Below are positions 36,000 through 59,696 of a stretch of DNA of 64,000 nucleotides, in pieces (position 1 is the stretch's first letter; each line of letters starts with the position of its first letter). The stretch spans positions 173,610 to 237,609 of IMG/VR virus record IMGVR_UViG_3300045972_000138, one strand, 5' to 3'. A model generated the notes under the pieces. That model ran no database searches. It was not told the DNA's origin and saw only the letters and a program-made list of their open reading frames with translations. Position numbers and translations under genes: made by a program.

Positions 36000-37305
36000 G
36001 AAATAGTTAGGATTAATAACACATATTTACCTAAAATACGACATAACACACAGTAGACCTAAAATGTGTAACACTAGACTAAATCCACAATAAAAAGGAC
36101 GAAAAATGCATAGTAAACAGTAGTTTTGCTATAGAACATACTAGCTAGAACCTTTAAACTACACTCAAAAACACTATATAGCATCCAACTACATAGAATA
36201 TTGCACTTTGTTGCACATTATTGCACTTTTATGGACGTATATAGAATTGAATGTTTTACGTCTAGGTCTCTGTAAGAAAAGAGATCTAAAATAGGAATCC
36301 CCCATAAGAGAATTAGGCCAGATTTCTATCTCAGATTTGGAATTTCAAATAGGAATCCTAGGTTAAAATCTTAAACTTGGCGCTTGAGTCAGAATCCTAC
36401 GCCAAAATCCTGCCTATAGGCGTGTAGAGCACCCTATGTGGGCATTATAGAAGAATAGACCCACCGTGACGAATATCGAGCGCAGCGGTGTAAACATAAT
36501 AGAAATTCAATTAGAATCGATGTCGAACCTTCCTAGACCACGCAGCACCACATAGGATTATCTTTCACTATGCAAACGTTTCAACATAGTTACCGCTTTC
36601 GATATTCTCCAGTATAACCGCATCGACACTGTTATGCTTACTATAGAAACCCACTTTAGCCAAATCTTTCACTATAGCATACCGACGTGAAACCCTATTG
36701 GAAGCCTATTTATACTATAGTTTCACAGTGATAACCGCAGAAATCCTTTTGCTAGGCTAACGGGAAGCAACTGTAACCCACTTTGCTGCACTATAGTCTA
36801 GCAAGATTCTCATAGTGCGCTATGTATAGTGATCGCTATAAGAGTATCACATAGAGTTTCAAAAGGGTTTCGTCTAGGGTTTCGATCAATGAATTTCGAG
36901 TTTCGAAGAGTTTCAAGTGTGGGTTTCTTACAACGGTTTTCGATAAAATTTCTCGTGGTGTGGTTTTTATACAACGGATTTCTGATTGGGTTTCGAATAA
37001 CTAAATCACTTTGATTTAAGAAGTCTAGGGTTTCGATGTGGGCGGTATGTTAGCATATAAACGGCGAATAGGTCAACCACTGGATGGAGACCTTTGTAAA
37101 ACGTTTGTTAACTTGTGGCAAGTATACGACACTTGGTGGATCTGGTGTTTATCTCGCTTTAAGCGATCGGCCACTAGTGATCAAGTTGCGAGGTCCGGGA
37201 ATACCTCGCATTGTCTGCAGTGCTTTTAATTTTTTATAAGCGAGGTTAGGAGTAGAGTTTCTACCTCGCGGGCACTAGTCTTGTGCAATGAATATTAAAG
37301 CGAGG
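36000..37305. other. long non-coding block with phased short repeats (possible origin/packaging/DNA-entry region)
   Basis: No credible ORF; RTTTC(G) units about every 10-13 bp in 36857-37037; 12-15-bp direct repeats; CTCGC/GCGAG chain at 37190-37305. Confidence 0.55.
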
Positions 37306-37316: not shown

Positions 37317-37547
37317 ATGAAAGAAACTATCATTATTTGTTTAATGTGCTCTATACTTGTTCTCGGCTATGCTGGTTCAAGGCCGGCCACTAAGCAGACC
37401 GAGACTGTGCAATGCCCTAACTTAGAGCAATTACTTGCTGAAAAGGTAGCAAAGGAAAAACAGGATCGCTTAGACAAAGCTAAAGAGCGCCGCGATAAAA
37501 TCATCGAAGGTCTTCAAACAATAGACAAAATATTCAGCGACCCTTGA
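37317..37547 (+). CDS. small secreted/membrane-anchored protein
   Basis: N-terminal hydrophobic helix, coiled-coil tail. Confidence 0.6.
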   Translation: MKETIIICLMCSILVLGYAGSRPATKQTETVQCPNLEQLLAEKVAKEKQDRLDKAKERRDKIIEGLQTIDKIFSDP

Positions 37548-38778: not shown

Positions 38779-39135
38779 TGTTTAAACTAGATAGTACACC
38801 AATCGCATCCGAGTATCTTGAACACAAGAATATGGAATGCACACTGGGCGAGTATGTTGTTACTATTCGCACTCGCACAAAGGACTCGCGGACAGGCAGC
38901 TATGCGCGTGGCTTTAAGTTCAGCAGCAACACATATGGCTTCTTGGTACGCACGCTCAGGGGCACCAAGTACTACAAGCCCTCGCGCTACAGTGCTGATC
39001 ACGGCAAGAGCTGGCACGAGACATTTGAATCAATGCTGAAGCAACGTGCAGGGCTTGTTAAGTTGGATAGCAGCCAGCACAAAGAGTTCGCTTTCGACAG
39101 CATCCAACAGATCAACAAAGACTACGATCGCAACT

Positions 39136-39570
39136 ATGCGTGGCACCCGTAAGATACTTGCTGCGCTAGTGTTAGCGGCAGCAATGCCCGCATATGCCCT
39201 TATCACCACAGGGGAAATACTAGCAGCAGCCTCTTGCAACAGCATCGCAGACAATGCATACTTCGCGAGGGAGTTCGAAGCAGCATTTGGTAAGCCTGTA
39301 CGCAATGAGCAGGGTGCGCTGTGGTATAAGGCAAGCGGGGAGGCATATGGCACACAGATCCGCGAAGTCTTTGTGTCTAACGTGAGTTCTCGCTTGTTCG
39401 TAGGTGTGGTTCTCACAGGTAAGCCCGAGGCTGTAGTTGCCAGTGTCCCTACCTCCCAACTCTATCCAACTAATGTATTCCCAACCAACAATCACTGGAT
39501 AGGAACTGATGGCCGCAGCATTATGTGGCACGATGGCAAATATACGAAAATGTTTTGTACACCAAAGTAG
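39136..39570 (+). CDS. putative secreted protein
   Basis: Signal peptide MRGTRKILAALVLAAAMPAYA. Confidence 0.65.
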   Translation: MRGTRKILAALVLAAAMPAYALITTGEILAAASCNSIADNAYFAREFEAAFGKPVRNEQGALWYKASGEAYGTQIREVFVSNVSSRLFVGVVLTGKPEAVVASVPTSQLYPTNVFPTNNHWIGTDGRSIMWHDGKYTKMFCTPK

Positions 39571-40454
39571 GATTTGGTGTTATAATTGCTTATCGCAACA
39601 AGGAGCAGCAAATGAAAAAGTTCTTTAAGTACACAGCAGAACACATTGGTCGTGAACGTGCAACCAAGTTTGTTAAGCTGCTGGAATCGGAAGACGTGGA
39701 TGTGATGCACGCAATGATGGACCCGGTCTTCGAAAACCAGTTCGTGTTGTTCGTGCAATGCACCGATGCTGAAGCGAAGGTTATCAAGAATCGTGTGTGG
39801 GAACTGAACAACGGTGCCTACAACGAGATGTTGGTCGTGGATGCAGACGAGATGGAGGAGTATCTGTAATGGCTAAGCTAAACGAAACGCAAGTAAACAA
39901 AGCATACGGGAAGCTGGAAACAGCTATGCTTGCACTGCAAGAGGAAGTGGTGGACTTCAAGCGTGCTTTCCCCATTGAGTCCAGTAAGCTGGCTCTCGAC
40001 GACGCTATGAGATCAGCGATGGGCGCACTCGAGGATGTGGACAGTGACATCACATCGCATTTTGCAACTCGTTAAGGATATCAAATGACTATCGTACGCA
40101 AAGGTGTTCGTGGAACTTGGGAAGCCGAAGACAGCATTGATCTTGTAGCACTGCGGGTGCTTAAGATCCACACGCATAAGGTAAGCACCGGGCAGCTTGT
40201 TACTACTGCCACAGTGCTTACAAAGGACAATGGTTTCCTATCGCATATGGTGTATCACGACTTCTCGCAACGTGTGATCGTGAGCAAAGATCGCTGCACC
40301 GAGGGCAATGTTACTGCACAGCACGCAGCGGCAATGGCCGGGATTAACCAGATCCACAGTGCCATCACTGCACACTATGTGAAGAAAGATGAAGTGGTGA
40401 CTGCCTAACAGGAATTTTAGTGTTATAATGTACACATCAACAAAGGAGTACACT

Positions 40455-41334: not shown

Positions 41335-41340
41335 GGAGCT

Positions 41341-41670
41341 ATGATGCGCCCTGTAATTGTGGCGGCCCTCGTGGCGGCCCTTACAGGGTGTGCCGTCCCT
41401 GTACCGAGGTTTGAGACGGCAGTAGGGTTAGTGCAGTGGCACAAAGTGAAAGACTTACAGGATATGCGCGTCATTTGCGATGATGTGCGATTCAAAATGC
41501 CGGGAATCACATACGGCTGCTATAAGATGGATAGCGAGAACAAGGTGTGCCACATCTACGCAATGGATAACGAACGATACTTCGGTACACTTGGGCACGA
41601 ACTCAAGCATTGTTTTGATGGCAGGTTCCACGATCAATTTGGAAATAGTGCGTATCCAATCGACAAATAG
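41341..41670 (+). CDS. small HExxH (zincin-like) lipoprotein
   Basis: LTGC lipobox; CHIYA...LGHELKHCFDGRFH; paralog of 57566..57895. Confidence 0.7.
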   Translation: MMRPVIVAALVAALTGCAVPVPRFETAVGLVQWHKVKDLQDMRVICDDVRFKMPGITYGCYKMDSENKVCHIYAMDNERYFGTLGHELKHCFDGRFHDQFGNSAYPIDK

Positions 41671-44880: not shown

Positions 44881-44902
44881 GCCCCGCAAGGGGCTTTCTT
44901 TT
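44881..44902 (+). terminator. intrinsic terminator
   Basis: GCCCC-GCAA-GGGGC followed by TTTCTTTT. Confidence 0.85.
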
Positions 44903-44981
44903 GGGCTATTCGTTTTTGAATACCTTGACACTCTAAATCTGATATGTTATACTTAGATCATAACTTATTAAGGAGCCACAG

Positions 44982-45227: not shown

Positions 45228-45252
45228 GCATTAGTCCTTTGTGTGTAAAGAA

Positions 45253-45631
45253 GCCACCTTAGGGTGGTTTTCTTTTGGTTGGATAAACAGGTTGCCCATT
45301 CATATCATATGTTGTATTATACATGTATTAACTACTTAAGGACTTGTATGAAAAATCTCTCTATTATCATTGCTTCGATGGTACTAGCATCAGCAGCGTT
45401 TGCAGCAGATTCTACCGCTACACAAACAATTGTGTTGGCAAAAGGGCTGACACTTACCTGCTCGAACGTCTCGTCTGTTTACGGTGTGGCCAATGGCGAT
45501 ACAACCGAGGCTCCTGCGGCAAAAGGTTCGCTGACTGTCAATTACAACGGCCGCCTCTATTTCTGCTCTACGGCTACGAAATAACCGATCTGCACATCCG
45601 CAAACCACCTTAGGGTGGTTTTCTTTTGGTT
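45253..45631 (+). repeat. duplicated terminator CCACCTTAGGGTGGTTTTCTTTTGGTT flanking 45348..45584
   Basis: Identical copies at about 45254-45280 and 45605-45631. Confidence 0.75.
45348..45584 (+). CDS. small secreted protein
   Basis: Signal peptide MKNLSIIIASMVLASAAFA; two Cys. Confidence 0.7.
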   Translation: MKNLSIIIASMVLASAAFAADSTATQTIVLAKGLTLTCSNVSSVYGVANGDTTEAPAAKGSLTVNYNGRLYFCSTATK

Positions 45632-45745
45632 AAAATATCTTTAAAAATCCGTAGACCTACAACTCTTCCTGCAGTATAATCAATACATGGGCAGCAGATA
45701 TAGCGGTCCAGAGTTAGTTTACTTTAATCAACTTTAGGAGTCTAT

Positions 45746-46204
45746 ATGACAAAAGGTATCCGCGCATTCGTTAACGACACGTTCAACAACACACTGTCCA
45801 AGCTGGGCGAACTGGGCAACATTGCCTTCCGTGCAGAAGTGATGAACCAGGCTATCATGGCCTTTGGTATCAACGTTGCATCCGCTGCAACGCATTACAA
45901 CCACAGCCTGAAGATGGCGCGTGCTGCAAACCCCGAAGCTGTTGCTACGCTGGGTCGTCCGGAAGACAAGAAGGGCGGACGCAAGCCCACGCTGGTGGAT
46001 GTGGTTAAGGCCAAGTCCGGCGAAGTGGTTGCAACTGGCGTCACCAAAGCTGCCGCTGAAGCAATGATTGCCAAAGCTGTTGCTGCCAAGAAGACCAAAC
46101 TGTCCATCAAGGTGGTGATCAACACCCCGGCCGAAGCTCCTGCAACCCCTGTGGAAGCTGCACTTGAATCCGGTGCACTGCACGCAGAAGCTGCATTGGC
46201 ATAA
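45746..46204 (+). CDS. ASAATHYN family putative DNA-binding protein
   Basis: MTKGIRAFVN...FRAEV...ASAATHYN...LGRPEDKKGGRKP. Confidence 0.75.
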   Translation: MTKGIRAFVNDTFNNTLSKLGELGNIAFRAEVMNQAIMAFGINVASAATHYNHSLKMARAANPEAVATLGRPEDKKGGRKPTLVDVVKAKSGEVVATGVTKAAAEAMIAKAVAAKKTKLSIKVVINTPAEAPATPVEAALESGALHAEAALA

Positions 46205-46634
46205 GCAGGGCCCGCAAGGGCCTTGTTTGCAGAGTGTTATAATGTAGCACTCTCCAAACAAGAAGGAGTTATCATGCCAGACTTTGATGATGTAGCCCTT
46301 GAAGATGCAATGTGTGCTGGATGTCAACCCGACAACGAATGGGAAGACGAAGATGATCAATGGGAAGACGATCTCACTATTGATTCCGGCGATCCTCTTG
46401 ACATCGAGTACGATCGTTAATTTTCCAAGATGGATTATTATTCCTAAGTAGGAATTTAAAATCCGAAACTTGGCCTGTCCTTTACACGTAACACGCATAT
46501 GACACTTACTACCCTCATCCTGCTCATTGCAGCGTGCGTCTTATTTTCAGAGGACCACCCTATACTTGGCATTTTGATGTTGTTCATCATCTTCCGATAG
46601 TATATAATATAAACATCAACAACAGGAGTTTACT

Positions 46635-47063
46635 ATGCTAATGAACGACGCACACACAGATTGGGACGTAGCTGACAACGATACACGTCCTGCCATTGCT
46701 ACACTGCACACAGGTGGCGGCGGATACTGGAGTAACATCAAACGTGATGTACACATTACTGAACTCACTGTTCCGTACATTAACGAAGAAGGCGACTTTG
46801 GTGAACTGCGTGTACATTTCAACACAGACAGCTGGCGCGTTGACAAAGTTGGATTGATATACACTGACAAGCAGTTTATGATAGAACTGCAAGCGTGGTT
46901 GTTGTCTATGGGACTTGCTGGATTAGATGTTGAATACAGCGAGCAAGGTATGCAGGGCGACAACTATGTTTCGTGCGATGTTGAAGCAGAATTCCTGAAA
47001 ACCTGGAAAGTAGCACATCCGGAAGCCTACAAGGCCGCATACGACAACATTTGGGCAGACTAA
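46635..47063 (+). CDS. hypothetical protein
   Basis: Own promoter cassette; YSEQGMQGDNYVS motif. Confidence 0.75.
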   Translation: MLMNDAHTDWDVADNDTRPAIATLHTGGGGYWSNIKRDVHITELTVPYINEEGDFGELRVHFNTDSWRVDKVGLIYTDKQFMIELQAWLLSMGLAGLDVEYSEQGMQGDNYVSCDVEAEFLKTWKVAHPEAYKAAYDNIWAD

Positions 47064-47231
47064 GCGACAGCGAGGAAGGGGCTTAGGCCCTTTTCGTTTG
47101 GTCATTTGAACCTCGGTGGCATAGATCAAGGCGCCGGTCGGACTAGAGCGAGGTTGCATAAAGATCAAACAAAACGGTTGCACACCAATCAATTCCTGTT
47201 ATAATAAACACATCGCAACAAGGAGCACATT

Positions 47232-47546
47232 ATGCTACTTCAACTCACTCCGTTCCCCATCAAGATGTTTGCACACAATCCAGAATCCAAGATGCTCGTT
47301 GTTGAATTGAGCGACTTTGGTTTGCCTGTTGGTATGTTGCCCTTTGGTCAGCTCTACGATGATGCGTGCGACGAAGGCTTTGCAATATATAACCATCGTA
47401 CTGGCAGCACAACCTTTTGGCACACTGCTGCCGATGTGCGCGATGCAGACGGCGACCTGACTACATGGATCCTGCAACCCACAACCGAGTCCTGCCGCAA
47501 GCATCCGGGCGTGCAGAACTACACGATGCACATACTCAACGACTAG
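47232..47546 (+). CDS. hypothetical protein
   Basis: Own promoter cassette; YDDACDEG motif. Confidence 0.7.
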   Translation: MLLQLTPFPIKMFAHNPESKMLVVELSDFGLPVGMLPFGQLYDDACDEGFAIYNHRTGSTTFWHTAADVRDADGDLTTWILQPTTESCRKHPGVQNYTMHILND

Positions 47547-48073
47547 GAGCACACCATGTTCGACATTATCCTTATTCGCTGGGGCTGGTACAAGTATCGC
47601 AAGGAGTTGGGTTATCCCATCGGCCTGCGTCGTGCTATGTTCTCGCAGATGCCACGATTCGGATCTTTTTACGAAGGCGAGGCGGGTTGCCCGGCATCTG
47701 ACAAACGTGATTACGTGTTAGTTCGCAAATACGAAACGGAGAATCCATAATGGCTTATCATCTTACTGGTCACGGAGCCTACAAGAAGGCAATTCAACGC
47801 AGCCTGCTACCTGTCGAGGGTGGATTGCATTATACGGCAAGCACAGACATCACCTCGGAGGACGCACTCGGATCGCCGGTCAACATACAGCGAGGCACAG
47901 GTTACAAGATAACTGGTACCAAAGACGGCAACGGCTACGTGGTGACCATCCTCGATGGATCCAAAGCAACCTATTACTTAGAGGCAGAAGAAGGTTGTAA
48001 ACTTTGCTAAAGTGGTTGCACAAACGGTTTCTGGTGTTATAATAAACACATCAGCAACACAATAGGAACTTAA

Positions 48074-48940
48074 ATGCCTACTCCACAACAGCAAATTATC
48101 GACAAGTGCAAGGAAGTGTACGAAACGGCTACACTCCTGTACGGTGTTGATATGTCCCGTGTAACCATTCACTTTGATCTTAAAGGTCACAATGCTGGAA
48201 TGGCATGCCGCCGCGGTGCCCAATACTACATGCGCTTCAACCGCGACATGCTTACACGTGATGCATTCGATCATGTGCTCAACAACACTGTGCCGCACGA
48301 AATTGCACACATTGTCTGCTTCATGAAACCCCAATATGGTCGCAATCACGACAGCGGCTGGGAGCGTGTTTGCCGTGCATTGGGCGGAACGGGCGCTCGC
48401 GCACATACCGAGGAAGTAGTGTATGGAAAAGGCACTACATATGAATATGTCACAAGCACTGGAAAGACTGTACGTGTTGGTGATCGTCATCACAAAGTTA
48501 TCCAAGCTGGCCGTTCACTTACTTGGAAACGTGGTTTGGGCACTGTTACAAACGCATGCCAATACAGCATTGTTGGTGTCCAAGGGCGCACACTTGCAAA
48601 CCCGCGTACTATTGTACCAACTGTACCTGCAGCCACTCCGGCATATGTTCCGGCATACCCATTTGGGGTTATTGGAACACAACTGCAACCAAAGGTACCG
48701 CACACAGTGGAAGTACCGAAACGTACACCACGCACTGTTGCCCCAACTGCCCCACACTTCCGCGAAGGTGCAAGCAAAGCAGCTATATCGCGTTCCATTA
48801 TGCTTGCAGGGCATACACGCGGTCAAACATATGAGCAAATCATTAGCGCAATGATGCTCGCGAATGGATATGATCGCCAACTTGCCCGTGCAACATACAA
48901 AGCAAACTTTGAAAAGGTTGGAGTGCCTGCTCCACAGTGA
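48074..48940 (+). CDS. SprT-like zinc metalloprotease
   Basis: FDLKGHNAG, TVPHEIAH and HDSGW. Confidence 0.85.
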   Translation: MPTPQQQIIDKCKEVYETATLLYGVDMSRVTIHFDLKGHNAGMACRRGAQYYMRFNRDMLTRDAFDHVLNNTVPHEIAHIVCFMKPQYGRNHDSGWERVCRALGGTGARAHTEEVVYGKGTTYEYVTSTGKTVRVGDRHHKVIQAGRSLTWKRGLGTVTNACQYSIVGVQGRTLANPRTIVPTVPAATPAYVPAYPFGVIGTQLQPKVPHTVEVPKRTPRTVAPTAPHFREGASKAAISRSIMLAGHTRGQTYEQIISAMMLANGYDRQLARATYKANFEKVGVPAPQ

Positions 48941-48952
48941 TAAATATGGGAT

Positions 48953-49486
48953 ATGAACTTAACTGAAATATCCCTACCCTCAACACAATACCTTACAGAA
49001 GCCTTCCGTAGCAATACAGAGGGCTTCTCTCTTGACGATCTTCTACTCATAGCACACACCTTCTTGTCTGAGGCAAAGAACAATAAGTCTCGCTCTGTGC
49101 CCATCGGCACCTTGAACAACGCTACCGAGGGCGTAGTCTTTGTAGAAGCATCCTGCTATGCATCTATGACTGCCCCTAAGATACAGCACTTGCCTAAGCT
49201 ACAAGCTAAAGTAGATGAGTTTAAAGCTAGTAAAAAGGCGAACAAAATGCAGCCATACGGTCCTAACGACAATGCGTTTGTGGGCGGTGGTCCTATCTCG
49301 AATATGATGCCGGGATTACGCCACGCGCACGTAACAAGGGACCTAAGCATTGTGTATGCCCTCTCGGGTGCCAATCCAACTGTCATTACATTGTACGGTA
49401 TCTTTAGCCACGCAGAGACAGGTACTGGAACACCGGGCAAACCCGATAGGCAGAAGAGTTTCGCAAAGTTTATAAAGAACCAATAA
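48953..49486 (+). CDS. RelE/YafQ-like RNase domain protein
   Basis: C-terminal GLRHAHVTRDLSIVY...LYGIFSHAE resembles YafQ; ATAAATA box at 48940. Confidence 0.5.
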   Translation: MNLTEISLPSTQYLTEAFRSNTEGFSLDDLLLIAHTFLSEAKNNKSRSVPIGTLNNATEGVVFVEASCYASMTAPKIQHLPKLQAKVDEFKASKKANKMQPYGPNDNAFVGGGPISNMMPGLRHAHVTRDLSIVYALSGANPTVITLYGIFSHAETGTGTPGKPDRQKSFAKFIKNQ

Positions 49487-49545
49487 ATCGGTTTACTTGC
49501 TTCGTGTTGATGCTATAATTAAAACATCAACAACAGGAGCTCTTA

Positions 49546-49854
49546 ATGCAAGCAAAGAAAGCAACACCACAACATTTTTCACTTAACACTGTAGCAGGCC
49601 GCGTTGCTTTGCTTACAGGCATTGTGGAGGGGGTTGTACTGCAAAAAGAAATTATGCACGCAGTAATTCAAGACACTGAAAAGCGCCCGTACCGCAAGCC
49701 TGTCGTTGCATACGGCAAACGTTACCCGAGTGTTACAGCAGCAGCATTGGCCAATTCGGGTGCAGTGGGGCGCAAAGCAGTAAACGCAATGCAGAAGAAC
49801 ATTGCACGCTGGTGCAACGAAGACTGCCACGTGGGCTTCTACTGGTCCGAATAA
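49546..49854 (+). CDS. hypothetical protein (NUMOD1-like segment)
   Basis: YGKRYPSVTAAA. Confidence 0.6.
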   Translation: MQAKKATPQHFSLNTVAGRVALLTGIVEGVVLQKEIMHAVIQDTEKRPYRKPVVAYGKRYPSVTAAALANSGAVGRKAVNAMQKNIARWCNEDCHVGFYWSE

Positions 49855-50907
49855 CATAAACGAAAAGGGGTTGACAGCCCCTTTTTTCTTTTGTATAATA
49901 CATTATGGCACAAATCACTATTATGGATCACGTTGTATTCCCCGATGGAAGTACCAACGAAGTCCATGCGACTATCACACACAGTGGTTGCAACATCGAA
50001 TACAGCGGGGCATTAACATCTGTCTCGTGGGAACAAATGGCAGATGTAGAGCAGCTTAGTGAGTTGTTTGGTTCACAGACTGTCCGCGTGTTTAAGGTTA
50101 TAGTACAGCTCTTGGGCAGGATCTACAGCGGCAAGGATGCATACAAACTTGTAGTCTGATTTGCGTGCCTAGATTTCAAGGTCAGATTTATGTTTCTAAA
50201 TCGGATTTTTAAACAAGGATCTGGCACAGGTTTCGTGCCTAAAGACTCAAAGGCACCTGAGCAGGCAGACCGAGGCACGTATACAATGGACAACCACACA
50301 CTAATCATTACACCGGAACAGAAGCGACTAATCATAAAAGCTCTGGAAAAGTTCTCGCAATTGCAGCTCGGGCAGACTAGTCTAGAGCAGCGAGAAGCAA
50401 AGAAGCTGGAGCAGTTGCTGGCACGTCATAAAGATAGTATAGTTGTAGACGCGGTAAATAGCGATACGCGCTAGTATATAATTAACTCTTGCCGGGTACG
50501 CAAGGGATCACTACAACCGCAACATTATACACCCACTGTATACGACGATACTGCTTTGAAGATAGCAGAGGGTCACTACGTTGTGGGGAGTAGCAGCAAA
50601 CTAATATGCGTAAGGATTTGGGTAAGACCCATTGGCTTCTATTAGCATTGCTTTTCTTATCTGGATATACTGTAACGCAATGCATCGCGTTGTCCCTATC
50701 CTAGATTTTCATCCTTGGATTTCATTTTCTGCTCTTAAATCAATTTCCCTGATTTAAGACGGTATCCTCGCTCCCAATTTTGAGAATGCACTTTGATTGA
50801 GCGAGGATTTCGCAGACTGCCCACCTCGGTATCGATCTGACCCAGTTGTCATTGAATCGAGCGAGGAGAGCACGCAGTAATAGGAGCATCGTTGCCCCTA
50901 TTATGCA

Positions 50908-51324
50908 TTAGACCCAGTAAAGCTTTGCCTTCTTTGCAGAAGCCGCCTTGCGGACCAGTGCAGTTGCAGCATCAAACGACAGCTTCTCGGCAACAAGTGC
51001 CCCAGTGCTCTTGACGAACACAGAGAACTCAGTTTGCTCAAGCACAACAGCCGCTTCGGGTGCAATGCGAATCTTGGGCTTGCGTCCGCCCTTCTTGTCT
51101 TCTGCACGCCCCAGACCTTCGAGGAGCGGTGCAAGTTCTGCAACCTTCTTAGCCTCTTTGAAAGCGTGATTGTAGTGGGTTGCAGCAGAGGCAAGCGTAA
51201 TGCCGTAGTCGTCCATTGCGAATGCAATAACTTCTGCACGGAAGCGCGTGTTGCCCAGTTCCGCACGCTGGGGAAGCAAGTCTACGAACTTGCGGTTAAC
51301 TGCGGGGCGAATTCCTTTGTCCAT
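50908..51324 (-). CDS. ASAATHYN family putative DNA-binding protein
   Basis: MDKGIRPAVN...FRAEV...LASAATHYN...GLGRAEDKKGGRKP. Confidence 0.75.
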   Translation of the reverse strand: MDKGIRPAVNRKFVDLLPQRAELGNTRFRAEVIAFAMDDYGITLASAATHYNHAFKEAKKVAELAPLLEGLGRAEDKKGGRKPKIRIAPEAAVVLEQTEFSVFVKSTGALVAEKLSFDAATALVRKAASAKKAKLYWV

Positions 51325-51495
51325 CTTAAACTCCTGTTGCGTTGTTGATGTATGTATTATGCATCCAAAGGAAGCTTCCGTCAACAACTATTTTCCACTT
51401 TACATATCTTTACAGAACATTAGTCTCGCTCTGTGCCCATCGGCGTCTTGATCGACTCGTCCGAGGCTAAATATTCCATCCAATGGAGATATATT

Positions 51496-52239
51496 ATGAC
51501 AAAGACCTACAATGTAGTTAAGAGTGCACCAGACGCAAGGGACTATCAGTTCTCGCAGAAGGTATCGATACCAAAGAGCGTGCCCAGCGCGGTGGACTTG
51601 CGTCCGCATATGCCTACCGTTGTTGATCAGGGTAACCTAGGCAGTTGCACCGCGAATGCTATTGTAGCAGCATTTCAATACGATCTTACCAAACAAAAAT
51701 TAAACATATTCACAGGATCCCGCCTGTTTGTGTACTATAATGAACGTGTAATGGAAGGAAGTGTAGGACAGGATAGCGGTGCAATGATTCGTGACGGGAT
51801 TAAGTCCCTTAACACGTATGGCGTATGCAGCGAGCCAACGTGGCCTTATATCATAGCTAAGTTCGCAGTTAAACCGTCTACAGCAGCTTACACGCAGGCA
51901 AAGCTAAACAGAGCACTAACCTATTACAGCGTTGCGAGCAATCCTACTGCAATCAAAACAGCACTTGCCGCGGGCTTCCCAGTAGTGATCGGCATCGAAG
52001 TCTACGAGAGCTTTGAAAGCGATGCTGTAGCAGTAAGCGGTGTTGTTCCTATGCCTGGTCCCTCGGAGCAGTTACTCGGTGGTCATGCAGTCCTAGTGGT
52101 AGGCTACAATGATGTATTAAAACAATTCATTGTACGCAATAGTTGGGGCACTGGTTGGGGCAAAAGCGGATACTTCTTCTTGCCTTATGCATACACATCG
52201 CTAATGAGCGATTGCTGGGTAGTCTCCTCGGTGAACTAG
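51496..52239 (+). CDS. C1A papain-family cysteine peptidase
   Basis: DQGNLGSCTANA, GGHAVLVVGY and RNSWG catalytic motifs; GGAG SD. Confidence 0.92.
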   Translation: MTKTYNVVKSAPDARDYQFSQKVSIPKSVPSAVDLRPHMPTVVDQGNLGSCTANAIVAAFQYDLTKQKLNIFTGSRLFVYYNERVMEGSVGQDSGAMIRDGIKSLNTYGVCSEPTWPYIIAKFAVKPSTAAYTQAKLNRALTYYSVASNPTAIKTALAAGFPVVIGIEVYESFESDAVAVSGVVPMPGPSEQLLGGHAVLVVGYNDVLKQFIVRNSWGTGWGKSGYFFLPYAYTSLMSDCWVVSSVN

Positions 52240-52865
52240 ATCAAGACGCCGGGCGCCCTATAGCGAGGTCTATGTTGTTGCGAAAAAACAACTAGACCTT
52301 TTTCTTTGACCTGTTATAATTGATACATCAACAACAGGAGAACTATATGGCAACAGCACTTCAAGCATCAGTAGTTTCTAAACTCAACAAGCGCCAACAA
52401 ACCTCACTCCGCACCCTTCAGAACAAGGTAGAGAGCGGCCGAGGCTACGTATCTACCATTGCTGTAAGCGACGCACAAATGCGTGCATTGCAAGCAGCGT
52501 TTGATGCAGCGAAAGCCTCGGGGCACACTCTGCCACCCGAAGTTGCAATTGCTGCGGCTAAGTTGGGATTGAAATAAAATGGTAGCACAGCTTGGAAGCT
52601 GTGCTATAATAAAGCATCACAACAGGAGTTTACTATGCTCACAGCTCAAGAAACAAATAAGCTACGTCTTATTAAAGATATGGCTACCCGTGGTTTGGCG
52701 AATCAAGTATCGCGTGAAGACAAACAATGGGTTCTGGACATAGCAGCACGGGAAGGATCCTCAGTCCCCGCCCCTGCAGCAGCGATGGCGTTGCGTGAGG
52801 GTTACAACATTAGCCATCTCACAAACATCAGCAAGCAAACGGTTGCAGTATAACAGGAGTATATC

Positions 52866-53069
52866 ATGGCATTTGATGTAATTCAACTGTGCCGCAACGC
52901 CGGCAATGATTTGAAAGCTGACCTCGGTGGTGCGCCACTTGAAGACAGTATGGCATACGAGGTTGCAGGCTGCTTGCTGGATGATGCCGATATCCTCAAG
53001 GCTGCTAAGGCCAAGTGGCCGGGCAAGTCCCGCCAGATCCTGCAAGAGATCATGGCAGACTACATTTAA
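52866..53069 (+). CDS. hypothetical protein
   Basis: AGGAG SD. Confidence 0.65.
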   Translation: MAFDVIQLCRNAGNDLKADLGGAPLEDSMAYEVAGCLLDDADILKAAKAKWPGKSRQILQEIMADYI

Positions 53070-53372
53070 AGATAGACAGTGTGTTTCTTTGTGTTATAAT
53101 TGATATATCAACAACAGGAGCGCACACTATGCAAATTAATGGAAACAAAATTATTTACGCCACCCATGTTGTGGTGTGCGACCCCTCGTGTGCCAGCCCA
53201 GAGTACATGAAGATTATGGCAGAGCTTCTTGAGGATGCAAATGCACCTACTATGCGTGAACACGCACGGACTCTGCGCTATCACAATAATGATGGCACGT
53301 GGGGGATTAAACAGCACAAAGGCTATCAACCCTGTGCTATAATGTCTGCATAGCAACACAAAGGAGCACACT

Positions 53373-53711
53373 ATGCAAACAGTTCACGCTTACATCCGCT
53401 TAACCCACAAATACCGTGATGGTTGGAGTCACTTGGACAGTGACGAGTTTTTGACATCAGTACGCCTCACTCCGCCTAAGATGGTTCGCGAAGGCGAAGG
53501 GTACGACGACGGTGGCAAGTATGTGCAGTACCTGCGTGTTCCCCGTAATGTTAATCCTGGGCAGCTTGGACAAGCGTTGCGCGATACTATCGGGGGCAGC
53601 GACTGCCGACACGAGCACGACTGCTGCGGCTGCGCTACACGTTATGTTCGCACTAAGCTAGTTGCACCACGCAAGCTCAAAGTAACGACAAGCGTTACCT
53701 ACAACTATTAA
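53373..53711 (+). CDS. hypothetical protein
   Basis: CRHEHDCCGC motif; own promoter cassette. Confidence 0.7.
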   Translation: MQTVHAYIRLTHKYRDGWSHLDSDEFLTSVRLTPPKMVREGEGYDDGGKYVQYLRVPRNVNPGQLGQALRDTIGGSDCRHEHDCCGCATRYVRTKLVAPRKLKVTTSVTYNY

Positions 53712-54333
53712 GTTAGTTGCTACTAACAGGGGACTTCGGTCCCTTTTGTTTTGGCCGCTGTGTTCGTGCTCTATGCGATCAAGGTAGCACTGCTTAAGAG
53801 CGAGGATCGCCACAATCGGTATATAGATCAACAGAGTCTCGCTAAGGTACAGATACTGGGCTTAGGTCTATACCTAAGGTGCGAGGTCGGCCTAGACTTC
53901 TAAGCCTGATTTAGATTTTTAAAAATCAGAGTTAAACTCAGAAATCTAATTCTCGCACCTAAACAAGAATCTTAAACAAGAACCCTGCCTATAGGCCACG
54001 ATGCTTGCTAAGGACTACACGCAGGTTATTGTACAGAACTAGTGGCACAAAATAGCCTAAAAAGCGTATTAAAACACGCCTACAAGCTTTAGTAGAGCAC
54101 TGGGCAATACTTTAACACGACAGCACGTAATCAATGTGTTGCCTGTTCGTTACTCTCGCTAACGATTGCAAAAGAACCGGTAACAGCAGCAGCAGTCGTA
54201 CCGAGGTTGTGGCCTATAAGATTAGAACCTTAGATCGTTTAGACAAAGTCTCGCTCTGTGCCCATCGGCGTCTTGATCGACTCGTCCGAGGCTACAGATG
54301 ACTACATCTTAGACAGGTGATTGCAGCGGAGAC

Positions 54334-54434
54334 AAAAAAAGAGCGGCTTAGACTTAACTAAGACCGCCCTAACGTGGAGGAGAACCACGACTATGCAACA
54401 ACAAGACTCACACTAACAAAAACTATCTAGCTTG
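54334..54434 (-). ncRNA. candidate ~100-nt sRNA with an anti-SD loop
   Basis: TGTGTTATAAT promoter (TATAAT at 54445-54440), CGTGG-TTCTCCT-CCACG hairpin, terminator hairpin plus T7; no SD-led ORF on this strand. Confidence 0.6.
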
Positions 54435-54618
54435 ATGTAATTATAACACACTAACCTTACATCAAACTTACATATTCCTTACACCAAACTTACAGGTTTT
54501 CTCGCTGCAGGATTTAATACCTGCGCTTGCATTTGCGAGAGAAAACCTCACACTGCACGCAAATAACCGATAACCTCGCTGCGAGAACTTCGGTATACTG
54601 CGTGCTATCCGAGAGTGC

Positions 54619-54837
54619 CTAGTAATTAATTAAGCTTGGCACTTCATAGAACTTGCCGATTGTGATCAATGCAGAACGCACGGGTTCTGGGCTGCTTTGA
54701 TCGGCTAAGTTTAATATTTCATTACGCAGATACTTCTCGATGCTGTGCTCAAACAAGTCATAGATTTGATCTGAGGACAACTTATTGCACGCAAGCGCAA
54801 ACGCTTTTAAGTTGCTAAATTGTTTTACAGTGTGCAT
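54619..54837 (-). CDS. hypothetical protein
   Basis: AAGGAG SD and a TATAAT promoter. Confidence 0.7.
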   Translation of the reverse strand: MHTVKQFSNLKAFALACNKLSSDQIYDLFEHSIEKYLRNEILNLADQSSPEPVRSALITIGKFYEVPSLINY

Positions 54838-54889
54838 AGTGTAACTCCTTTGTGTAATGTATTATAACACAATTTGGAAGTTTTTGCTA

Positions 54890-55084
54890 TTAAAGTTCAA
54901 CTGTTTTGTTGGACTCTTCGACCGCACTAACAATCATTGCTCCCTTGAAGAAGCCTCCCGAGGAGATATCAAACGTTACGTCGCCGATACCATCAGTGAA
55001 GTGTTTGAGGAGGATGCGTTCAATCTCCTCAGTGCTGATTTCTATTACCTTCGTTACTTTTACAGAGGTGCGTTGTGTTGCCAT
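54890..55084 (-). CDS. hypothetical protein
   Basis: AGGAG SD and a promoter. Confidence 0.65.
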   Translation of the reverse strand: MATQRTSVKVTKVIEISTEEIERILLKHFTDGIGDVTFDISSGGFFKGAMIVSAVEESNKTVEL

Positions 55085-55701
55085 TTGTATTCTCCTGTTG
55101 TATGTCTATATTATAACACAGCAGATGGAAACTTCTCAAGTGCTGCACGCAATACTTCTGGTTGCGGGCCATGAGGTGTACCGTGGAAGTAAGCAAGAGT
55201 GTGACTCATTGCGGCAGCAAGACATTGCCACTCTTGCAGCGTAAAGTGCGCGTAAGCAATTTGTGTCTTCTGCAATTCAGTAAGTTCGAGCATCTCGTGT
55301 ACTCCTTAAGTAGACTTCTTTGCTTTGGGCTCGGGGAAATAAAACAGCTTAGTCTTGCCTGCAAGCCCGTGTTGCAGTGCGTAGCGCAAGCACACAGCTT
55401 TAGTGCCTATGCAATAAGCATACACACCGTCGTTGCTTATAAGTGTCCAGTCGTACATGTTAACTCCTTATGTACGTTTATTATAGCAGATTTTCTAAGT
55501 TAAAGTTCCATCTTTACATATCTTTACAAAGCAGCAATCGTGCTTTTAGCTTTGAGTTCTGCGATCTTAGGTAGCGAGGTAAGTCATCTTAGGAATCTAA
55601 AATCTAAGATAGATCCTCACACGACATGCTCAAGACGCCGACCTGTGCTGACCGAGATTGTTTGTTGACAACAGCAAGTAAATGTGCTATAAAATAACAC
55701 T

Positions 55702-55908
55702 ATGCAAACCTACCGATACACTCTGAAGGACCTGAGCACAGGTAACGAGGAGATTAGAGAGTTCACCGGATACGACAACGAAGTCTTCTCGGTTGACTCT
55801 ATCGCCTGCAAGAAGGTTAAAGACGAGGCCGCACGCTCTCTTATAGCGTACTGGAACTACTCACACAAAGGTAAGCGGAGTTACACCCTACTCTCGCCGG
55901 GGCACTAG
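55702..55908 (+). CDS. hypothetical protein
   Basis: TTGACA promoter upstream. Confidence 0.6.
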   Translation: MQTYRYTLKDLSTGNEEIREFTGYDNEVFSVDSIACKKVKDEAARSLIAYWNYSHKGKRSYTLLSPGH

Positions 55909-56729
55909 AGATTCTGCGAAGTACATAGGCAAGGCAGCAAGCAGCGATGATGCAGCAGCCTCGAGCACAAATGTCTTTGGTATCATAAATGCATACGCGA
56001 TAACAAACGCTATCGCCTGAACTACCAGGAAGACGGTAAACAAATAACGAGGATGCATTTTACTTGCTCTCGATGTTTGTCTGAGCGATCTCCCAAACCA
56101 TCTGCACGAAACGTTTGAAAGACATTGGCTTACCGCCGATGCAGTAAGTGCGTGTAACGTGTTGCAGGTAAGCGTAGTTGGCTGATGCGGGCATAGTGTG
56201 CTCCTTGTTGCGATAAAACAATTATAGCATAGAAACATTCCAATGCAACTCACTTTACATATCTTTACACAGCACAGGACCGTGCTCTACGTGATCAAGG
56301 CCAGCGACTTGACCTACCGAGGTTCTAAGTCGCTCGCGTCTTAGGTTTTTGTAACCTTTGATATCTGCAGCGCGACAGCCTCGGTGGAGGTTTTACTGCT
56401 GCGAAAAACCCCTGCGAGGTATAAAAACATACGGCCAGCCTCCTACGTGCAAACATTATAACATAGGACCTCGCTCTACAAGTAAATTCTTTAAGTAGAA
56501 TTTAATACCTTAGCGAGAACAAGTATTACCTCGCTGGTACACACTCAAGCCAGCGAGCAAGCATAGCGCGATACATACGCACTGTATAAAACAGCAGTAG
56601 TAACATTCTCGCAAAACCCATTTGTTCCCCTACACATATAGCACGGCAAATCAATTGTAAAGATATGTAAAGCAGCACACTTTCACCCAAAGAAGCGTTA
56701 TAATAAACACATAGCAACAAAGGACTAAC

Positions 56730-57895: not shown

Positions 57896-58001
57896 CTTCA
57901 ATGCCGGTATTTTTCTAGGCCTTAAAAAAATTTTACAGTAAAATTTTCTCCAGCCCACTATAGGGTCAATCATATTCCTATTTTTAGATAAATATGGGAT
58001 T

Positions 58002-58455
58002 ATGGTACTATATATGTTCCTTCCTACAATAAGGCCAGATTCAAGTAAGGAACTTATAAAACGTGTCCGTACAGCCAAAGTATGGCTAATAGAGCATAAG
58101 GTACTAGCAAGTGGAAGTTGTGTTATGTTCAATAATACCGAAGATTACCTATTCTTTAAACTTCAATTCAGCGACTTGCTACAGGACATATACAATGACA
58201 ATTAAGATAAATGTAAACAATTCATATATACAGCACGCCTACTCTGCTGCATACAATGCTTTATACGAGCCGGCTCAACGTGAATATGATTTCTTTAATA
58301 ATAGAGAACTTCATGATTACTGGATGGTACGTACTAAGGAATTGCTATGTGCTCAAAACAAATTCAAGATTATATCAGAGCGTAGTGGTTACCCTACTGA
58401 GATAGAGTTTGAGGATGAGAGCGATCTAATTGTGTTCAAATTGAAGTATAGATAA
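58002..58455 (+). CDS. two EDxxxFKL family paralogs (58002..58205, 58195..58455)
   Basis: FNNTEDYLFFKLQF and FEDESDLIVFKLKY. Confidence 0.7.
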
Positions 58456-58466
58456 ATATAGCAATT

Positions 58467-59696
58467 ATGTTACTATACGAACTCATATCCGAAGCTAGGC
58501 GTAACCCTGGGCAAAATGTTAAAGCTGAAGGGCACGAAGCGGCTGTTAATTTTCTAAAGAGTAAAGGCAAGGAATTACGATACTACGGGGTTAGTATGAC
58601 AGATATTCCTAAGCTAGGGATTAACCCCGGATCTAGGTATAACACTCCTGTAGGTATTTACTATTACCCTGCTGAATACTATGTAAGAAAGAAGAGTAAG
58701 GGTAAAGAATTAGAGTTTAAGGATGATGCACCTTATATACAGGTTTTTAAGATTAAGGCTAACACTATAGAACTTATCGATGAAGTAAACCACGATACGT
58801 ATGGTGGATACGTTAAGTTACTATATAAGAATGTTGGGCAGATTGCGAAGTATATTAATAAGTCGGAAAAAGAAACTTATAGCTTACTTAATAAACTAAC
58901 AATGGAAGCACCGCAAGAAGCTAAGGTTAATTCCTATGGTGGATGTCTATGGTATATACTTTACTCCTTGGGATTCTATGCTGGTAGGGATAAGCGCGAT
59001 AATGCTCCACCACGTAGTTCTGTTGTGTGGAATGCACTTATAAGAATGTTAGGATTAGATGGGATTGAGGATAACGGTGCGGGTATTATACACGAGAATG
59101 AACCTTACCAGGGTGTTATTGTAAATCCTAGAGGTGTGGAGCACGTTAATACATTTAAGAATGTAGGTAAGAAGGATGATACAACTAGCCTTAGATTTAC
59201 TAAGTGGGCTAATGCACCTATTAACGAATTTTCTATAGGTAACTTAGCGGATGATGTAGACGAGTGGGATATGCAATATAGTGATAAGCATAGGAAAGAA
59301 TGTAAGGCGATTATGACTAAGGTACTTACTGTATTACGTAACTCTCCTTCTACTTATTTAAGTTTGGGCCAGCGAAAAATATTCTCTTTGTTAAGGTTAA
59401 GTAATGACACTAATGTTAGGCAGGAATTGGCTGTAGGATATTTTGCTGCTAAGTTTCCTAGAATGAAGGCAGAGCTAGATGAAATAGTTACTGTATGGGA
59501 AGAAGAAAAGAATAGTGTTGAGTGGGCTGCGAAGCCAGAAAGTAGAAAGCAACGTGCATTTGCATTATGGGTACCTCCCGAGAAAGTAGCATACGCGCAT
59601 GAGTTTATGCGAAACTTAACTCCGTATAAATCCTCTAGTGCCGATGCTAAGAAGATGATTGATTATATCGAAGCTTCCTTAGCTAGGTTAAAGTAA
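58467..59696 (+). CDS. hypothetical protein (late, possibly virion-associated)
   Basis: 409 aa; ATAAATA box at 58452; MLLYELISEA start. Confidence 0.75.
   Translation: MLLYELISEARRNPGQNVKAEGHEAAVNFLKSKGKELRYYGVSMTDIPKLGINPGSRYNTPVGIYYYPAEYYVRKKSKGKELEFKDDAPYIQVFKIKANTIELIDEVNHDTYGGYVKLLYKNVGQIAKYINKSEKETYSLLNKLTMEAPQEAKVNSYGGCLWYILYSLGFYAGRDKRDNAPPRSSVVWNALIRMLGLDGIEDNGAGIIHENEPYQGVIVNPRGVEHVNTFKNVGKKDDTTSLRFTKWANAPINEFSIGNLADDVDEWDMQYSDKHRKECKAIMTKVLTVLRNSPSTYLSLGQRKIFSLLRLSNDTNVRQELAVGYFAAKFPRMKAELDEIVTVWEEEKNSVEWAAKPESRKQRAFALWVPPEKVAYAHEFMRNLTPYKSSSADAKKMIDYIEASLARLK

What the first reader, a model, noticed from the sequence alone, without database searches (positions are those of the whole stretch)
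47111..56420. Dispersed fixed-length 43-bp bipalindromic motif CCTCGG-N7-GATCAAG-N16-A(G/C)CGAG
Seen: seven 43-bp copies in both orientations (47111, 49088, 50824, 51424, 52226, 54249, 55615). Two are part of an identical 48-bp repeat (51422-51469 = 54247-54294), one is embedded in the coding sequence of 48953..49486, and one overlaps the C1A stop. Partial copies lie at 53777 and 56293. Looser CTCG(C/G)-N29-31-GCGAG pairs occur at ~37204, ~37263, ~50766, ~54500 and ~56379. Fixed boxes with variable spacers, and outer arms about three helical turns apart, point to a protein-bound DNA site rather than an RNA hairpin. Inference: a recombination, partition, nicking or DNA-entry site, or an operator specific to the early region.
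Basis: partly seen in the sequence, partly recalled or inferred. Interest (0 to 1): 0.7.

Follow-up and report, generated by a model that had tools for sequence, protein, structure and literature searches.

The report
Fixed-span inverted half-site family, phage early region
The 43-bp motif is real. It is the best-preserved branch of a family of about 25 sites, each two inverted YCTCGS words exactly 35-37 bp apart. The family occurs only in the early-gene region of this pond jumbo phage and its close relatives, and it most likely marks where a still unknown protein binds the DNA.

Summary
**Observation: confirmed and enlarged.**
- Five strong 43-bp copies lie at 47111+, 49089-, 51425-, 52226+ and 54250-. 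Weaker copies lie at 55615, 56281 and 53765.
- These are a subfamily of 24 CTCG-N31-33-CGAG pairs, plus one at N34. All lie in window 37153-56418.
- The rest of the 237.6-kb contig holds none. 500 dinucleotide shuffles of the region gave a mean of 0.4 and a maximum of 3.
- CTCG/CGAG is the only strongly enriched inverted 4-mer at that spacing, apart from its shifted form CCTC/GAGG.

**Context.** About half the copies lie inside + strand coding sequences.

**Relatives.**
- The family recurs in related metagenomic phages: L073 has 9 pairs against 0.32 expected, and L075 has 5 against 0.44.
- Some copies sit at orthologous positions, where the arms are conserved and the interiors have diverged.
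- A more distant relative, G001, lacks the family.

**RNA versus DNA.**
- No RNA fold signal was found, and there is no covariation in the arms.
- The innermost arm bases are S/S and are not complementary.
- A GATC box occurs in both orientations.
- Together these favour sequence-specific recognition of double-stranded DNA by a symmetric protein.

**Copying.** The coding-sequence copy at 49089 is not an insertion. Its interior was overwritten, which points to gene conversion between sites.

**Open points.** The binding protein and the function (operator or architectural site versus recombination site) are inferred, not shown.

The parts
37153..37192 (+). Family member, span 36. First of a tandem trio just before the first early gene (ATG 37317). 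GATC box 7 nt from the left arm.
   Evidence: Orthologous to L075 5155 and L073 1851.
37205..37244 (.). Family member, span 36. Second of the tandem trio. Arms CTCGC/GCGAG.
37265..37304 (.). Family member, span 36. Third of the trio. Its right arm GCGAGGT is the only Shine-Dalgarno-like sequence before ATG 37317.
37362..37403 (+). Probable member, span 38. Inside CDS 37317-37547. Carries a GTTCAAGG box.
38981..39020 (.). Member, span 36. Inside CDS 38778-39152.
39389..39429 (.). Member, span 37. Inside CDS 39046-39570.
39995..40033 (.). Member, span 35. Inside CDS 39869-40075. Its interior keeps a stretch like the B-type copies.
40264..40303 (-). Member, span 36. Inside CDS 40085-40408. GATC box 6 nt from the arm.
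   Evidence: Conserved at the same place in the ortholog L073 6302-6619. The arms are identical, synonymous sites included, while the interior has diverged.
41368..41408 (.). Member, span 37. Inside an ORF 41341-41670 that was not in my first gene list. The ORF has a lipoprotein-type signal peptide.
45470..45509 (.). Member, span 36. Inside CDS 45348-45584.
47111..47153 (+). Canonical 43-bp copy, type A. Lies between the terminator of gene 46635-47063 and the TGTTATAAT promoter at 47197.
   Evidence: Orthologous to L073 13299, behind the orthologous gene and terminator.
47642..47681 (.). Member, span 36. Inside CDS 47556-47750.
47854..47894 (+). Member, span 37. Inside CDS 47750-48010. A decayed type A copy that shares CGCCGGTC with 47111.
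   Evidence: (family D6).
49088..49130 (-). Canonical copy, type B, 1 mismatch. In frame inside CDS 48953-49486 (P0001, residues 46-60).
   Evidence: The homolog P0002 aligns through it with a 1-residue gap. The relative's DNA has CCTCGC ... CAAGG at the same place and spacing.
50354..50394 (.). Member, span 37. Inside CDS 50190-50474.
50767..50805 (.). Member, span 35. In the convergent intergenic region. Arms extend to 8 bp.
50825..50865 (+). Member, span 37.
51424..51466 (-). Canonical copy, type B. In the divergent intergenic region 51325-51495. Part of the 48-nt perfect repeat 51422-51469.
52226..52268 (+). Canonical copy, type A. Supplies the last codons and the stop codon of the C1 peptidase gene 51496-52239. 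The -10 of the next promoter lies 47 nt downstream, as at 47111.
52923..52961 (.). Member, span 35. Inside CDS 52866-53069.
53765..53805 (+). Degenerate copy. Left arm CGTGC, GATCAAGG box, right arm AGCGAGG. Lies just behind the terminator at 53728-53745.
54249..54291 (-). Canonical copy, type B. Lies in a gene-poor stretch 53712-54618. Second copy of the 48-nt perfect repeat (54247-54294).
54501..54539 (.). Member, span 35. Intergenic. Arms extend to about 9 bp and there is an inner hairpin.
54575..54613 (.). Member, span 35. Intergenic.
55615..55657 (+). Weak canonical copy. Left arm CCTCAC, GCTCAAGACGCCG box, right arm ACCGAG. Ends next to the -35 of the promoter of gene 55702-55908.
55788..55827 (.). 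Member, span 36. Inside CDS 55702-55908.
56281..56322 (+). Degenerate copy. Left arm CGTGC, GATCAAGG box, right arm ACCGAGG. Lies 10 nt behind a CTTTACATATCTTTACA box.
56380..56418 (.). Member, span 35. Intergenic. Its interior forms a hairpin.

Best explanation
**What the sites are.** They form a family of bipartite recognition sites in double-stranded DNA. Each site is two inverted half-sites YCTCGS, with centres 35-37 bp (about 3.5 helical turns) apart. About a third also carry a GATC(A/G)AG box 6-7 bp inside one arm.

**How they most likely work (inferred).**
- A symmetric dimeric or tetrameric DNA-binding protein, phage-encoded but not identified, reads both half-sites and measures the distance between them.
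- The 31-33 bp in between is therefore free to vary, and can even encode protein.
- The sites mark the early (host-takeover) gene region only. They cluster in tandem before the first early gene and often sit between a terminator and the next sigma-70-type promoter.
- The most likely role is operator-like or architectural control of early transcription, such as shut-off, insulation or compaction of this region.
- The binding itself and its effect are both inferred.

**How copies spread.** Copies exchange their interiors by gene conversion anchored on the arms. This explains near-identical 43-48-bp copies in unrelated surroundings.
For: **Frequency and confinement.**
- 24 pairs at spans 35-37, against a shuffle mean of 0.4 and maximum of 3.
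- None elsewhere in the 237.6-kb contig.

**Sequence-specific arms, not mere pairing.**
- Among all 4-mers, only CTCG/CGAG and its shifted form CCTC/GAGG are clearly enriched as inverted pairs at this span.
- Over 40 elements from four phages the arms read Y-CTCG-S ... S-CGAG-R.
- The inner S/S positions are complementary no more often than chance: CC 9 and GG 6, against CG 8 and GC 8. This is what two independently read half-sites predict.

**Orientation.** The GATC box keeps its offset from the arm but occurs in both orientations relative to transcription: 6 forward and 7 reverse.

**No single-strand structure signal**, and no Rfam family.

**Conservation in relatives.**
- L073 has 9 pairs against 0.32 expected. 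L075 has 5 against 0.44. L069 has 2 against 0.14.
- Orthologous positions are kept while interiors diverge.

**Placement.** A tandem cluster sits before the first early gene or promoter in three phages. The terminator-element-promoter order is conserved.

**Gene conversion.**
- The CDS copy at 49089 replaces a segment of equal length that already had arms in the relative.
- A 48-nt perfect repeat has unrelated flanks.
Against: - No binding protein is identified. HTH_39, the only recognisable DNA-binding early protein, is also present in G001, which lacks the family. No HU/IHF-like protein was found in the 237 kb held.
- The outer flank shows a strand asymmetry: T.G 15 against C.A 3, p = 0.0075. 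A purely symmetric duplex site does not predict this. It fits pairing in the + strand, or transcription-linked C-to-T bias.
- Half-sites 3.5 turns apart face opposite sides of straight DNA, so bending or wrapping has to be assumed.
- The distance from element to promoter is not constant.
- Many sites lie inside genes, far from any promoter.
- There are no expression or binding data. No RNA run was listed.
Confidence: 0.45

Rival explanations
1. The same bipartite DNA sites are targets of a site-specific nuclease or recombinase. Breaks or strand exchange at the sites drive patch-wise gene conversion and the shuffling of single-gene cassettes in the early region. On this reading the function is recombination, not regulation.
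For: - Interiors are copied between sites with unrelated flanks.
- The CDS copy 49089 was overwritten without a change in length.
- L073 1851 and 1990 share identical right halves but differ in their left halves.
- The order of orthologous early genes is scrambled between this phage, L073 and G001, and one gene is inverted.
- Elements sit at the swapped junction between 46635-47063 and 47232-47546.
- A 48-nt perfect direct repeat brackets a 2.8-kb gene block.
- L073 carries a NUMOD3 homing-endonuclease-like gene in its early region.
Against: - No recombinase or nuclease gene was recognised in this early region.
- No joint, inversion or deletion between copies was seen in three metagenomes, although their contigs are short.
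- Individual sites are kept at orthologous positions across about 60-70% protein identity. This is easier to explain by a direct function of each site.
- Most cassette junctions carry no element.
Confidence: 0.2
2. The element acts in RNA on the sense (+) transcripts. A short clamp helix YCUCG/CGAGR closes a loop of about 31 nt and is recognised by an RNA-binding protein or ribonuclease that controls early mRNA stability or processing.
For: - Outer flank pairs on the + strand are T.G 15, C-G 15, T-A 7 and C.A 3, so G.U-type pairs are favoured over A.C (p = 0.0075).
- The helix can be extended outward by at least one pair in 33 of 37 elements on the + strand, against 23 of 37 on the - strand. 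Intergenic copies reach 7-9 bp.
- The right arm CGAGG resembles a Shine-Dalgarno sequence.
- All 13 CDS copies lie in + strand genes.
Against: - Folds are no better than shuffles.
- The predicted probability of arm pairing is the same on both strands, 0.55 against 0.54.
- The arms never covary.
- The inner arm bases are not complementary.
- The conserved GATC box occurs in both orientations relative to transcription.
- There is no Rfam match.
- The strand bias can also come from C-to-T change on the non-template strand. This is an inference.
Confidence: 0.15
3. It is a selfish miniature mobile element of MITE, REP or RPE type, with 5-6-bp terminal inverted repeats, that inserts into intergenic and coding DNA.
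For: - Near-identical copies sit in unrelated flanks.
- The ends are inverted.
- Copies occur in both coding and non-coding DNA, as is known for Rickettsia palindromic elements (my own knowledge).
Against: - The CDS copy is not an insertion relative to its homolog, which differs by a 1-residue gap.
- No target-site duplication is visible.
- Spans of 39-41 bp are not multiples of three, yet the reading frames stay open.
- Sites are kept at orthologous positions.
- The family is strictly confined to one 19-kb region.
- No transposase was recognised.
Confidence: 0.07
4. The elements are passive PeSL-like homology patches. They are simply part of repeated terminator/promoter cassettes and have no recognition of their own.
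For: - The region is a hyperplastic early region, with many repeated TGnTATAAT promoters and ribosome-binding sites (families D1-D5).
- Some elements lie in terminator-element-promoter units.
- The two type A copies share a 124-bp cassette that includes the promoter.
Against: - Half of the elements lie inside genes, far from promoters.
- Only the arms and the span are conserved while the interior varies. Shared descent of a cassette does not explain this.
- The elements contain no promoter and no stable stem-loop.
Confidence: 0.08

Closest known systems
PeSLs (promoter-early stem-loop cassettes) of T4-like phages (PMC2839356, PMC4122927)
   Same: - Repeated short motifs concentrated in the hyperplastic early region of a large myovirus.
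- They lie between small ORFan genes, next to sigma-70-type promoters and terminators.
- Gene order in the region is shuffled between relatives.
   Different: - PeSLs are defined by an early promoter plus a stable, often GGGG...CCCC, stem-loop, and they are intergenic.
- The present elements contain no promoter and no stable stem-loop.
- They have a fixed span with a variable interior.
- Half of them lie inside coding sequences.
Region-restricted families of protein binding sites on chromosomes, such as matS/MatP, parS/ParB and SlmA or Noc sites (my own knowledge)
   Same: - A short dyad-symmetric word dispersed over one defined part of a genome.
- It occurs in genes and between them, in either orientation.
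- Such sites are read by one dedicated protein.
   Different: - Those sites are compact 13-16-bp palindromes. Here the half-sites are 36 bp apart with a free interior.
- The setting is a phage early region.
- The protein is unknown.
Long operators with conserved ends and a free centre, such as the 40-bp bio operator bound by a BirA dimer or paired ARG boxes bound by ArgR (my own knowledge)
   Same: - The total length is about 40 bp.
- Recognition is concentrated at the two ends of an imperfect inverted repeat.
- The spacing is fixed.
   Different: Those are single-copy or few-copy operators at promoters, not about 25 sites that include intragenic ones. No sequence similarity was tested or is expected.
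Integron attC sites (my own knowledge)
   Same: - Conserved short inverted ends with a variable centre.
- They are associated with arrays of small genes in one orientation.
- A strand bias is seen.
   Different: - attC sites are 57-141 bp and of variable length. They fold as largely paired single-stranded hairpins and lie at the 3' end of each cassette.
- Here the length is fixed, the interior is unpaired and many copies are intragenic.
- No integrase was recognised.
Palindromic elements inside genes, such as Rickettsia RPEs, and REP/MITE-type repeats (my own knowledge)
   Same: Dispersed copies lie in coding and non-coding DNA, and the coding copies are translated in frame.
   Different: Those arise by insertion and are longer and self-complementary. 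Here the coding copy is a replacement of equal length, and the interiors do not pair.

Membership tests
PeSL (T4-like promoter-early stem-loop cassette) | Contains a sigma-70-type early promoter within the repeated motif. | tested here: not met
   No promoter lies inside the 43 bp. Where a promoter follows, its -10 is 30-63 nt beyond the element.
PeSL (T4-like promoter-early stem-loop cassette) | Contains a stable stem-loop that acts as a terminator or attenuator. | tested here: not met
   Fold z-scores run from -1.9 to +0.8 for the best copies. Interiors are no more structured than shuffles. The true terminators lie outside the element.
PeSL (T4-like promoter-early stem-loop cassette) | Intergenic, in hyperplastic regions, at the ends of insertions, deletions or replacements between close relatives. 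| tested here: inconclusive
   The region is hyperplastic and shuffled, and one swapped junction carries elements. However, 13 of 25 elements are intragenic, and no close relative with an indel was available.
Known RNA families (Rfam 15) | Match to a covariance model. | tested here: not met
   Only one chance-level hit (E = 0.87) in 35-60 kb, and it does not lie at an element.
Structured RNA element in general | Base pairs kept through compensatory changes, and a fold better than shuffles. | tested here: not met
   The arms are invariant and no other inverted 4-mer is clearly enriched. Inner arm bases are not complementary. Folding tests. Only the outer flank shows a G.U-type bias.
MITE / REP / RPE-type mobile repeats | Copies arise by insertion: an empty site exists in relatives, often with a target-site duplication. 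| tested here: not met
   The homolog of P0001 aligns through the element with a 1-residue gap, and the relative already has arms there. No duplication is seen at the flanks.
MITE / REP / RPE-type mobile repeats | A cognate transposase (for example a RAYT) is present in the genome. | tested here: inconclusive
   None was recognised among the larger early proteins. The contig is only about 62% of the genome, and many small proteins have no family.
Integron attC | Variable length of 57-141 bp, largely self-paired as a single strand, one per cassette 3' end, with an IntI integrase. | tested here: not met
   The span is fixed at 39-41 bp, the interior is unpaired and there are intragenic copies. 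No integrase was recognised.
IHF binding site (WATCAANNNNTTR) | Match to the full consensus, with an A/T-rich flank. | tested here: not met
   Only ATCAA is shared. The TTR part reads CCG and the flank is G+C-rich. No IHF/HU-family gene was found in the contig.
Dimeric-protein operator (generic) | Two inverted half-sites at fixed spacing, read independently, working in either orientation. | tested here: met
Dimeric-protein operator (generic) | Demonstrated binding by a protein. | not testable with these tools
   There are no binding data and no candidate protein was singled out.

The most novel reading that the evidence does not exclude
A phage-encoded, site-specific system uses fixed-span bipartite sites as anchors to swap 31-33-bp patches between sites, and whole single-gene cassettes as well, throughout the host-takeover region and even inside coding sequences. 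This would be a targeted diversification mechanism for early genes, distinct from PeSLs, integrons and diversity-generating retroelements.
Probability: 0.12. Interest if true: 0.85.

Novelty: new variant of a known kind. Interest (0 to 1): 0.6.

Why it matters
- Early "host-takeover" regions of large phages are the least understood and fastest-changing parts of their genomes.
- This is a dense family of sites specific to that region. It has a strict molecular-ruler geometry, it tolerates lying inside genes, and it is conserved across diverged relatives.
- That points to a dedicated protein acting on the whole early region, whether it controls transcription, organises the DNA or promotes exchange.
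- Finding that protein would give a handle on how such phages switch off or reshuffle their early genes.
- The motif itself is also a simple marker for this phage clade in metagenomes.

Tried and rejected
**Searches that found nothing useful.**
- RNA hairpin or known RNA: RNAalifold on both strands, single folds, arm-pairing probabilities, folds with forced arms against shuffled interiors and Rfam. None gave a signal.
- The strict pattern in viral, metagenome and genome collections gave 0 hits. A looser pattern gave one unrelated hit.
- megablast against phage records gave no match.
- Relatives of the C1 peptidase (L001, L002) share only that gene.

**Sequencing runs.**
- No RNA run was listed.
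- Three pond DNA runs hold the region. Their contigs only break at the 48-nt repeat, and their loose ends are other copies of repeats.
- Both X2 and X3 lack contigs over about 48733-49270. A hole proves nothing.

**Ideas rejected.**
- Repeated peptide or paralogous genes: only one paralog pair exists, 45746-46204 with 50908-51324.
- Promoter for a phage sigma factor: the box orientation is mixed relative to the genes, and no sigma region 2 was found.
- HIP1-type palindromes: GCGATCGC is absent.
- General GATC enrichment: GATC is not unusual across the genome.
- Dam or HU/IHF partner: neither was found.
- HTH_39 as the discriminating partner: it is also present in G001, which lacks the family.
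- Fixed distance to promoters: not found.

No complex prediction was run, because no candidate protein justified one.

Full report
**Setting.**
- The window is the last 64 kb of a 237,609-bp single-contig virus record from a pond metagenome, JGI 3300045972. CheckV rates the contig about 62% complete.
- It is a jumbo myovirus with rIIA, a tail sheath and a family-B DNA polymerase. The polymerase is at most 43% identical to those of Atu_ph07- and Rak2-like phages. No near relative exists in the phage collection.
- Window 37-57 kb is a typical early region:
  - dozens of small + strand genes
  - repeated TGnTATAAT promoters and AGGAG ribosome-binding sites
  - higher G+C (47-49%, against 38-43% elsewhere)
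  - a few larger genes: an S53 peptidase, a SprT-like protein, a C1 peptidase and an HTH_39 protein

**The observation.**
- The strict 43-bp pattern has five strong copies, at 47111+, 49089-, 51425-, 52226+ and 54250-. Shuffles gave none.
- A profile search over the whole contig adds only the weaker 55615 and 56281 copies, plus faint ones at 37372 and 53765.
- The copy listed at 50824 shares only the arms.

**The larger family.**
- Listing every CTCG and CGAG showed that they pair up at one distance.
- Over the whole contig, the start-to-start distances of CTCG...CGAG give 6, 8 and 10 pairs at 35, 36 and 37, and one at 38. Every one lies in window 37153-56418. The remaining 215 kb has none at these distances.
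- An independent pattern search gave 24 matches, against 1 for the reversed control.
- 500 dinucleotide shuffles of the region gave a mean of 0.4 and a maximum of 3.
- Among all inverted 4-mers, only CTCG/CGAG and its shifted form CCTC/GAGG are clearly enriched at this span.
- No other arrangement of the two words has a preferred distance.
- Thirteen of the 25 lie inside + strand coding sequences, in various frames. The rest are intergenic.
- The 43-bp motif is therefore the youngest, best-preserved subfamily. Types A and B share a GATCAAGRCGCCG box. Decayed A-like and B-like copies sit inside genes at 47854 and 39995.

**Relatives.**
- Searches with early proteins recovered related early regions from other metagenomes.
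- L073 (S53 peptidase 70% identical) has 9 pairs at 35-37, against 0.32 expected.
- L075 has 5 against 0.44, and L069 has 2 against 0.14.
- L074 (56% identical) is at chance.
- The 353-kb relative G001 shares about ten early genes at 30-67% identity. It has no 43-bp motif, and its pairs are at chance level and lie elsewhere in the genome.
- Several elements are orthologous:
  - the tandem cluster before the first early gene or promoter
  - an element inside gene 40085-40408 and its L073 ortholog, where the arms and the GATC box are identical at synonymous sites while the interior has diverged
  - an element behind the conserved terminator of gene 46635-47063

**DNA or RNA?**
- The profile of 40 elements is Y-CTCG-S ... 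S-CGAG-R.
- Against an RNA or single-strand structure:
  - no fold signal
  - equal arm-pairing probability on both strands
  - no compensatory arm variants
  - inner S/S positions complementary only at the chance rate
  - the GATC box in both orientations relative to transcription
- For a strand-specific effect:
  - The outer flank pair is T.G in 15 elements and C.A in 3 (p = 0.0075).
  - Outward helix extension is more frequent on the + strand.
  - This may reflect pairing in the sense strand, or C-to-T bias on the non-template strand. I cannot separate the two.
- On balance the data fit two independently read, sequence-specific half-sites at a measured distance, that is, a symmetric DNA-binding protein.
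- No candidate protein stands out. HTH_39 is also in G001. No HU/IHF, Dam or sigma region 2 was found.

**How copies spread.**
- P0001 (ORF 48953-49486) has a full-length homolog that aligns through the element with a 1-residue gap.
- The relative's DNA carries CCTCGC and CAAGG at the same position and spacing, with an unrelated interior.
- The site is therefore old. In this phage its interior was overwritten by the type B sequence, or served as its source.
- This is a replacement of equal length, meaning gene conversion and not insertion. It also explains why the span stays fixed.
- The half-identical pair L073 1851/1990 and the 48-nt perfect repeat with unrelated flanks point the same way.
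- The order of orthologous early genes is scrambled among the phages.
- No structural variant ending in an element was seen in the three pond metagenomes. Their contigs merely break at the 48-nt repeat.

**Comparison with known systems.**
- PeSLs of T4-like phages are the closest published analogue in setting. They are defined by a promoter plus a stable stem-loop, and these elements contain neither.
- MITE/REP/RPE-type insertion is contradicted by the homolog alignment.
- attC-type folded sites are contradicted by the fixed length and the unpaired interiors.
- The geometry resembles long operators with conserved ends. The distribution resembles region-restricted site families such as matS.
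- I found no description of such a family in the paper library.

**Verdict.**
- The feature is real, highly non-random, clade-conserved and larger than reported.
- Best reading: a family of protein-recognised bipartite DNA sites specific to the early region (confidence 0.45). The role is probably regulatory or architectural, and a recombination role is the main rival.
- The function and the partner protein remain inferred.

Noticed in passing
window 51398-51414, 55512-55528, 56253-56269 (+) and 56656-56672 (inverted); G001:C1:326725-328583: A second repeat, CTTTACATATCTTTACA (two TTTACA words 10 bp apart), sits in the three divergent promoter regions, 9-10 nt from a family element in two of them. 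Unlike the 43-bp motif it is conserved in the distant relative G001, which has 5 copies within 1.9 kb. In run X2 it also occurs next to sequence that is not in this genome.
   Followed up: partly
window 36000-37150, and 53889-53996; L073 760-1800: A 1.2-kb non-coding stretch ahead of the early genes holds GGTTTCGA-type and CACTATAG-type iterons. One 113-bp part is repeated at 66% identity in the gene-poor stretch at 53.9 kb. The layout is conserved in L073. It may be an origin or a control region.
   Followed up: no
window 51422-51469 and 54247-54294: This perfect 48-nt direct repeat brackets a 2.8-kb block holding the C1 peptidase and five small genes. The Logan contigs of the source sample end exactly in the repeat, and a separate 2,837-bp contig (L010) spans the block. 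A deletion or circle form is possible but was not shown.
   Followed up: partly
window 45746-46204 (+) and 50908-51324 (-): This is the only paralog pair in the early region (53% identity over 85 residues). The two genes lie in opposite orientation and share a 40-nt stretch that is 93% identical.
   Followed up: no
L071 (ENA ERZ27280181, 18.6 kb): A protein 82% identical to the early S53 peptidase (43428-44861) lies in a quite different neighbourhood, among AAA ATPases, a large helicase and a McrB-like gene. This suggests recent transfer between a phage early region and a defence-island-like locus.
   Followed up: no
window 48940-48955, 57990-58002, 58455-58467: Genes without a Shine-Dalgarno sequence are preceded directly by GATAAATATGG or GATAAATATAG. 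This resembles the T4 late-promoter box TATAAATA and hints at a different promoter or initiation class.
   Followed up: no
window 41341-41670: This ORF of 109 residues has a lipoprotein-type signal peptide (…LTGC). It was not in my first gene list, and a family element lies in its signal-peptide coding part.
   Followed up: partly
window 48733-49315: Runs X2 and X3 have contigs on both sides of this stretch but none over it. The stretch holds the coding-sequence copy 49089. It may be a variant segment or just low coverage.
   Followed up: no
window 54619-55458 against G001 (L067 15850-16029): The four-gene minus-strand block is inverted relative to its neighbours when compared with G001, where the ortholog of 55111-55293 has the same direction as its neighbours. 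The block is flanked by elements in opposite orientation (54250- and 55615+).
   Followed up: partly
G000:C1:14223-14351 (outside the window): A small ORF with a sigma-70 region 4 domain (32.9 bits) and no region 2 nearby. A relative's early region (the contig carrying P0011) encodes a full sigma-70-family protein that this contig lacks.
   Followed up: no
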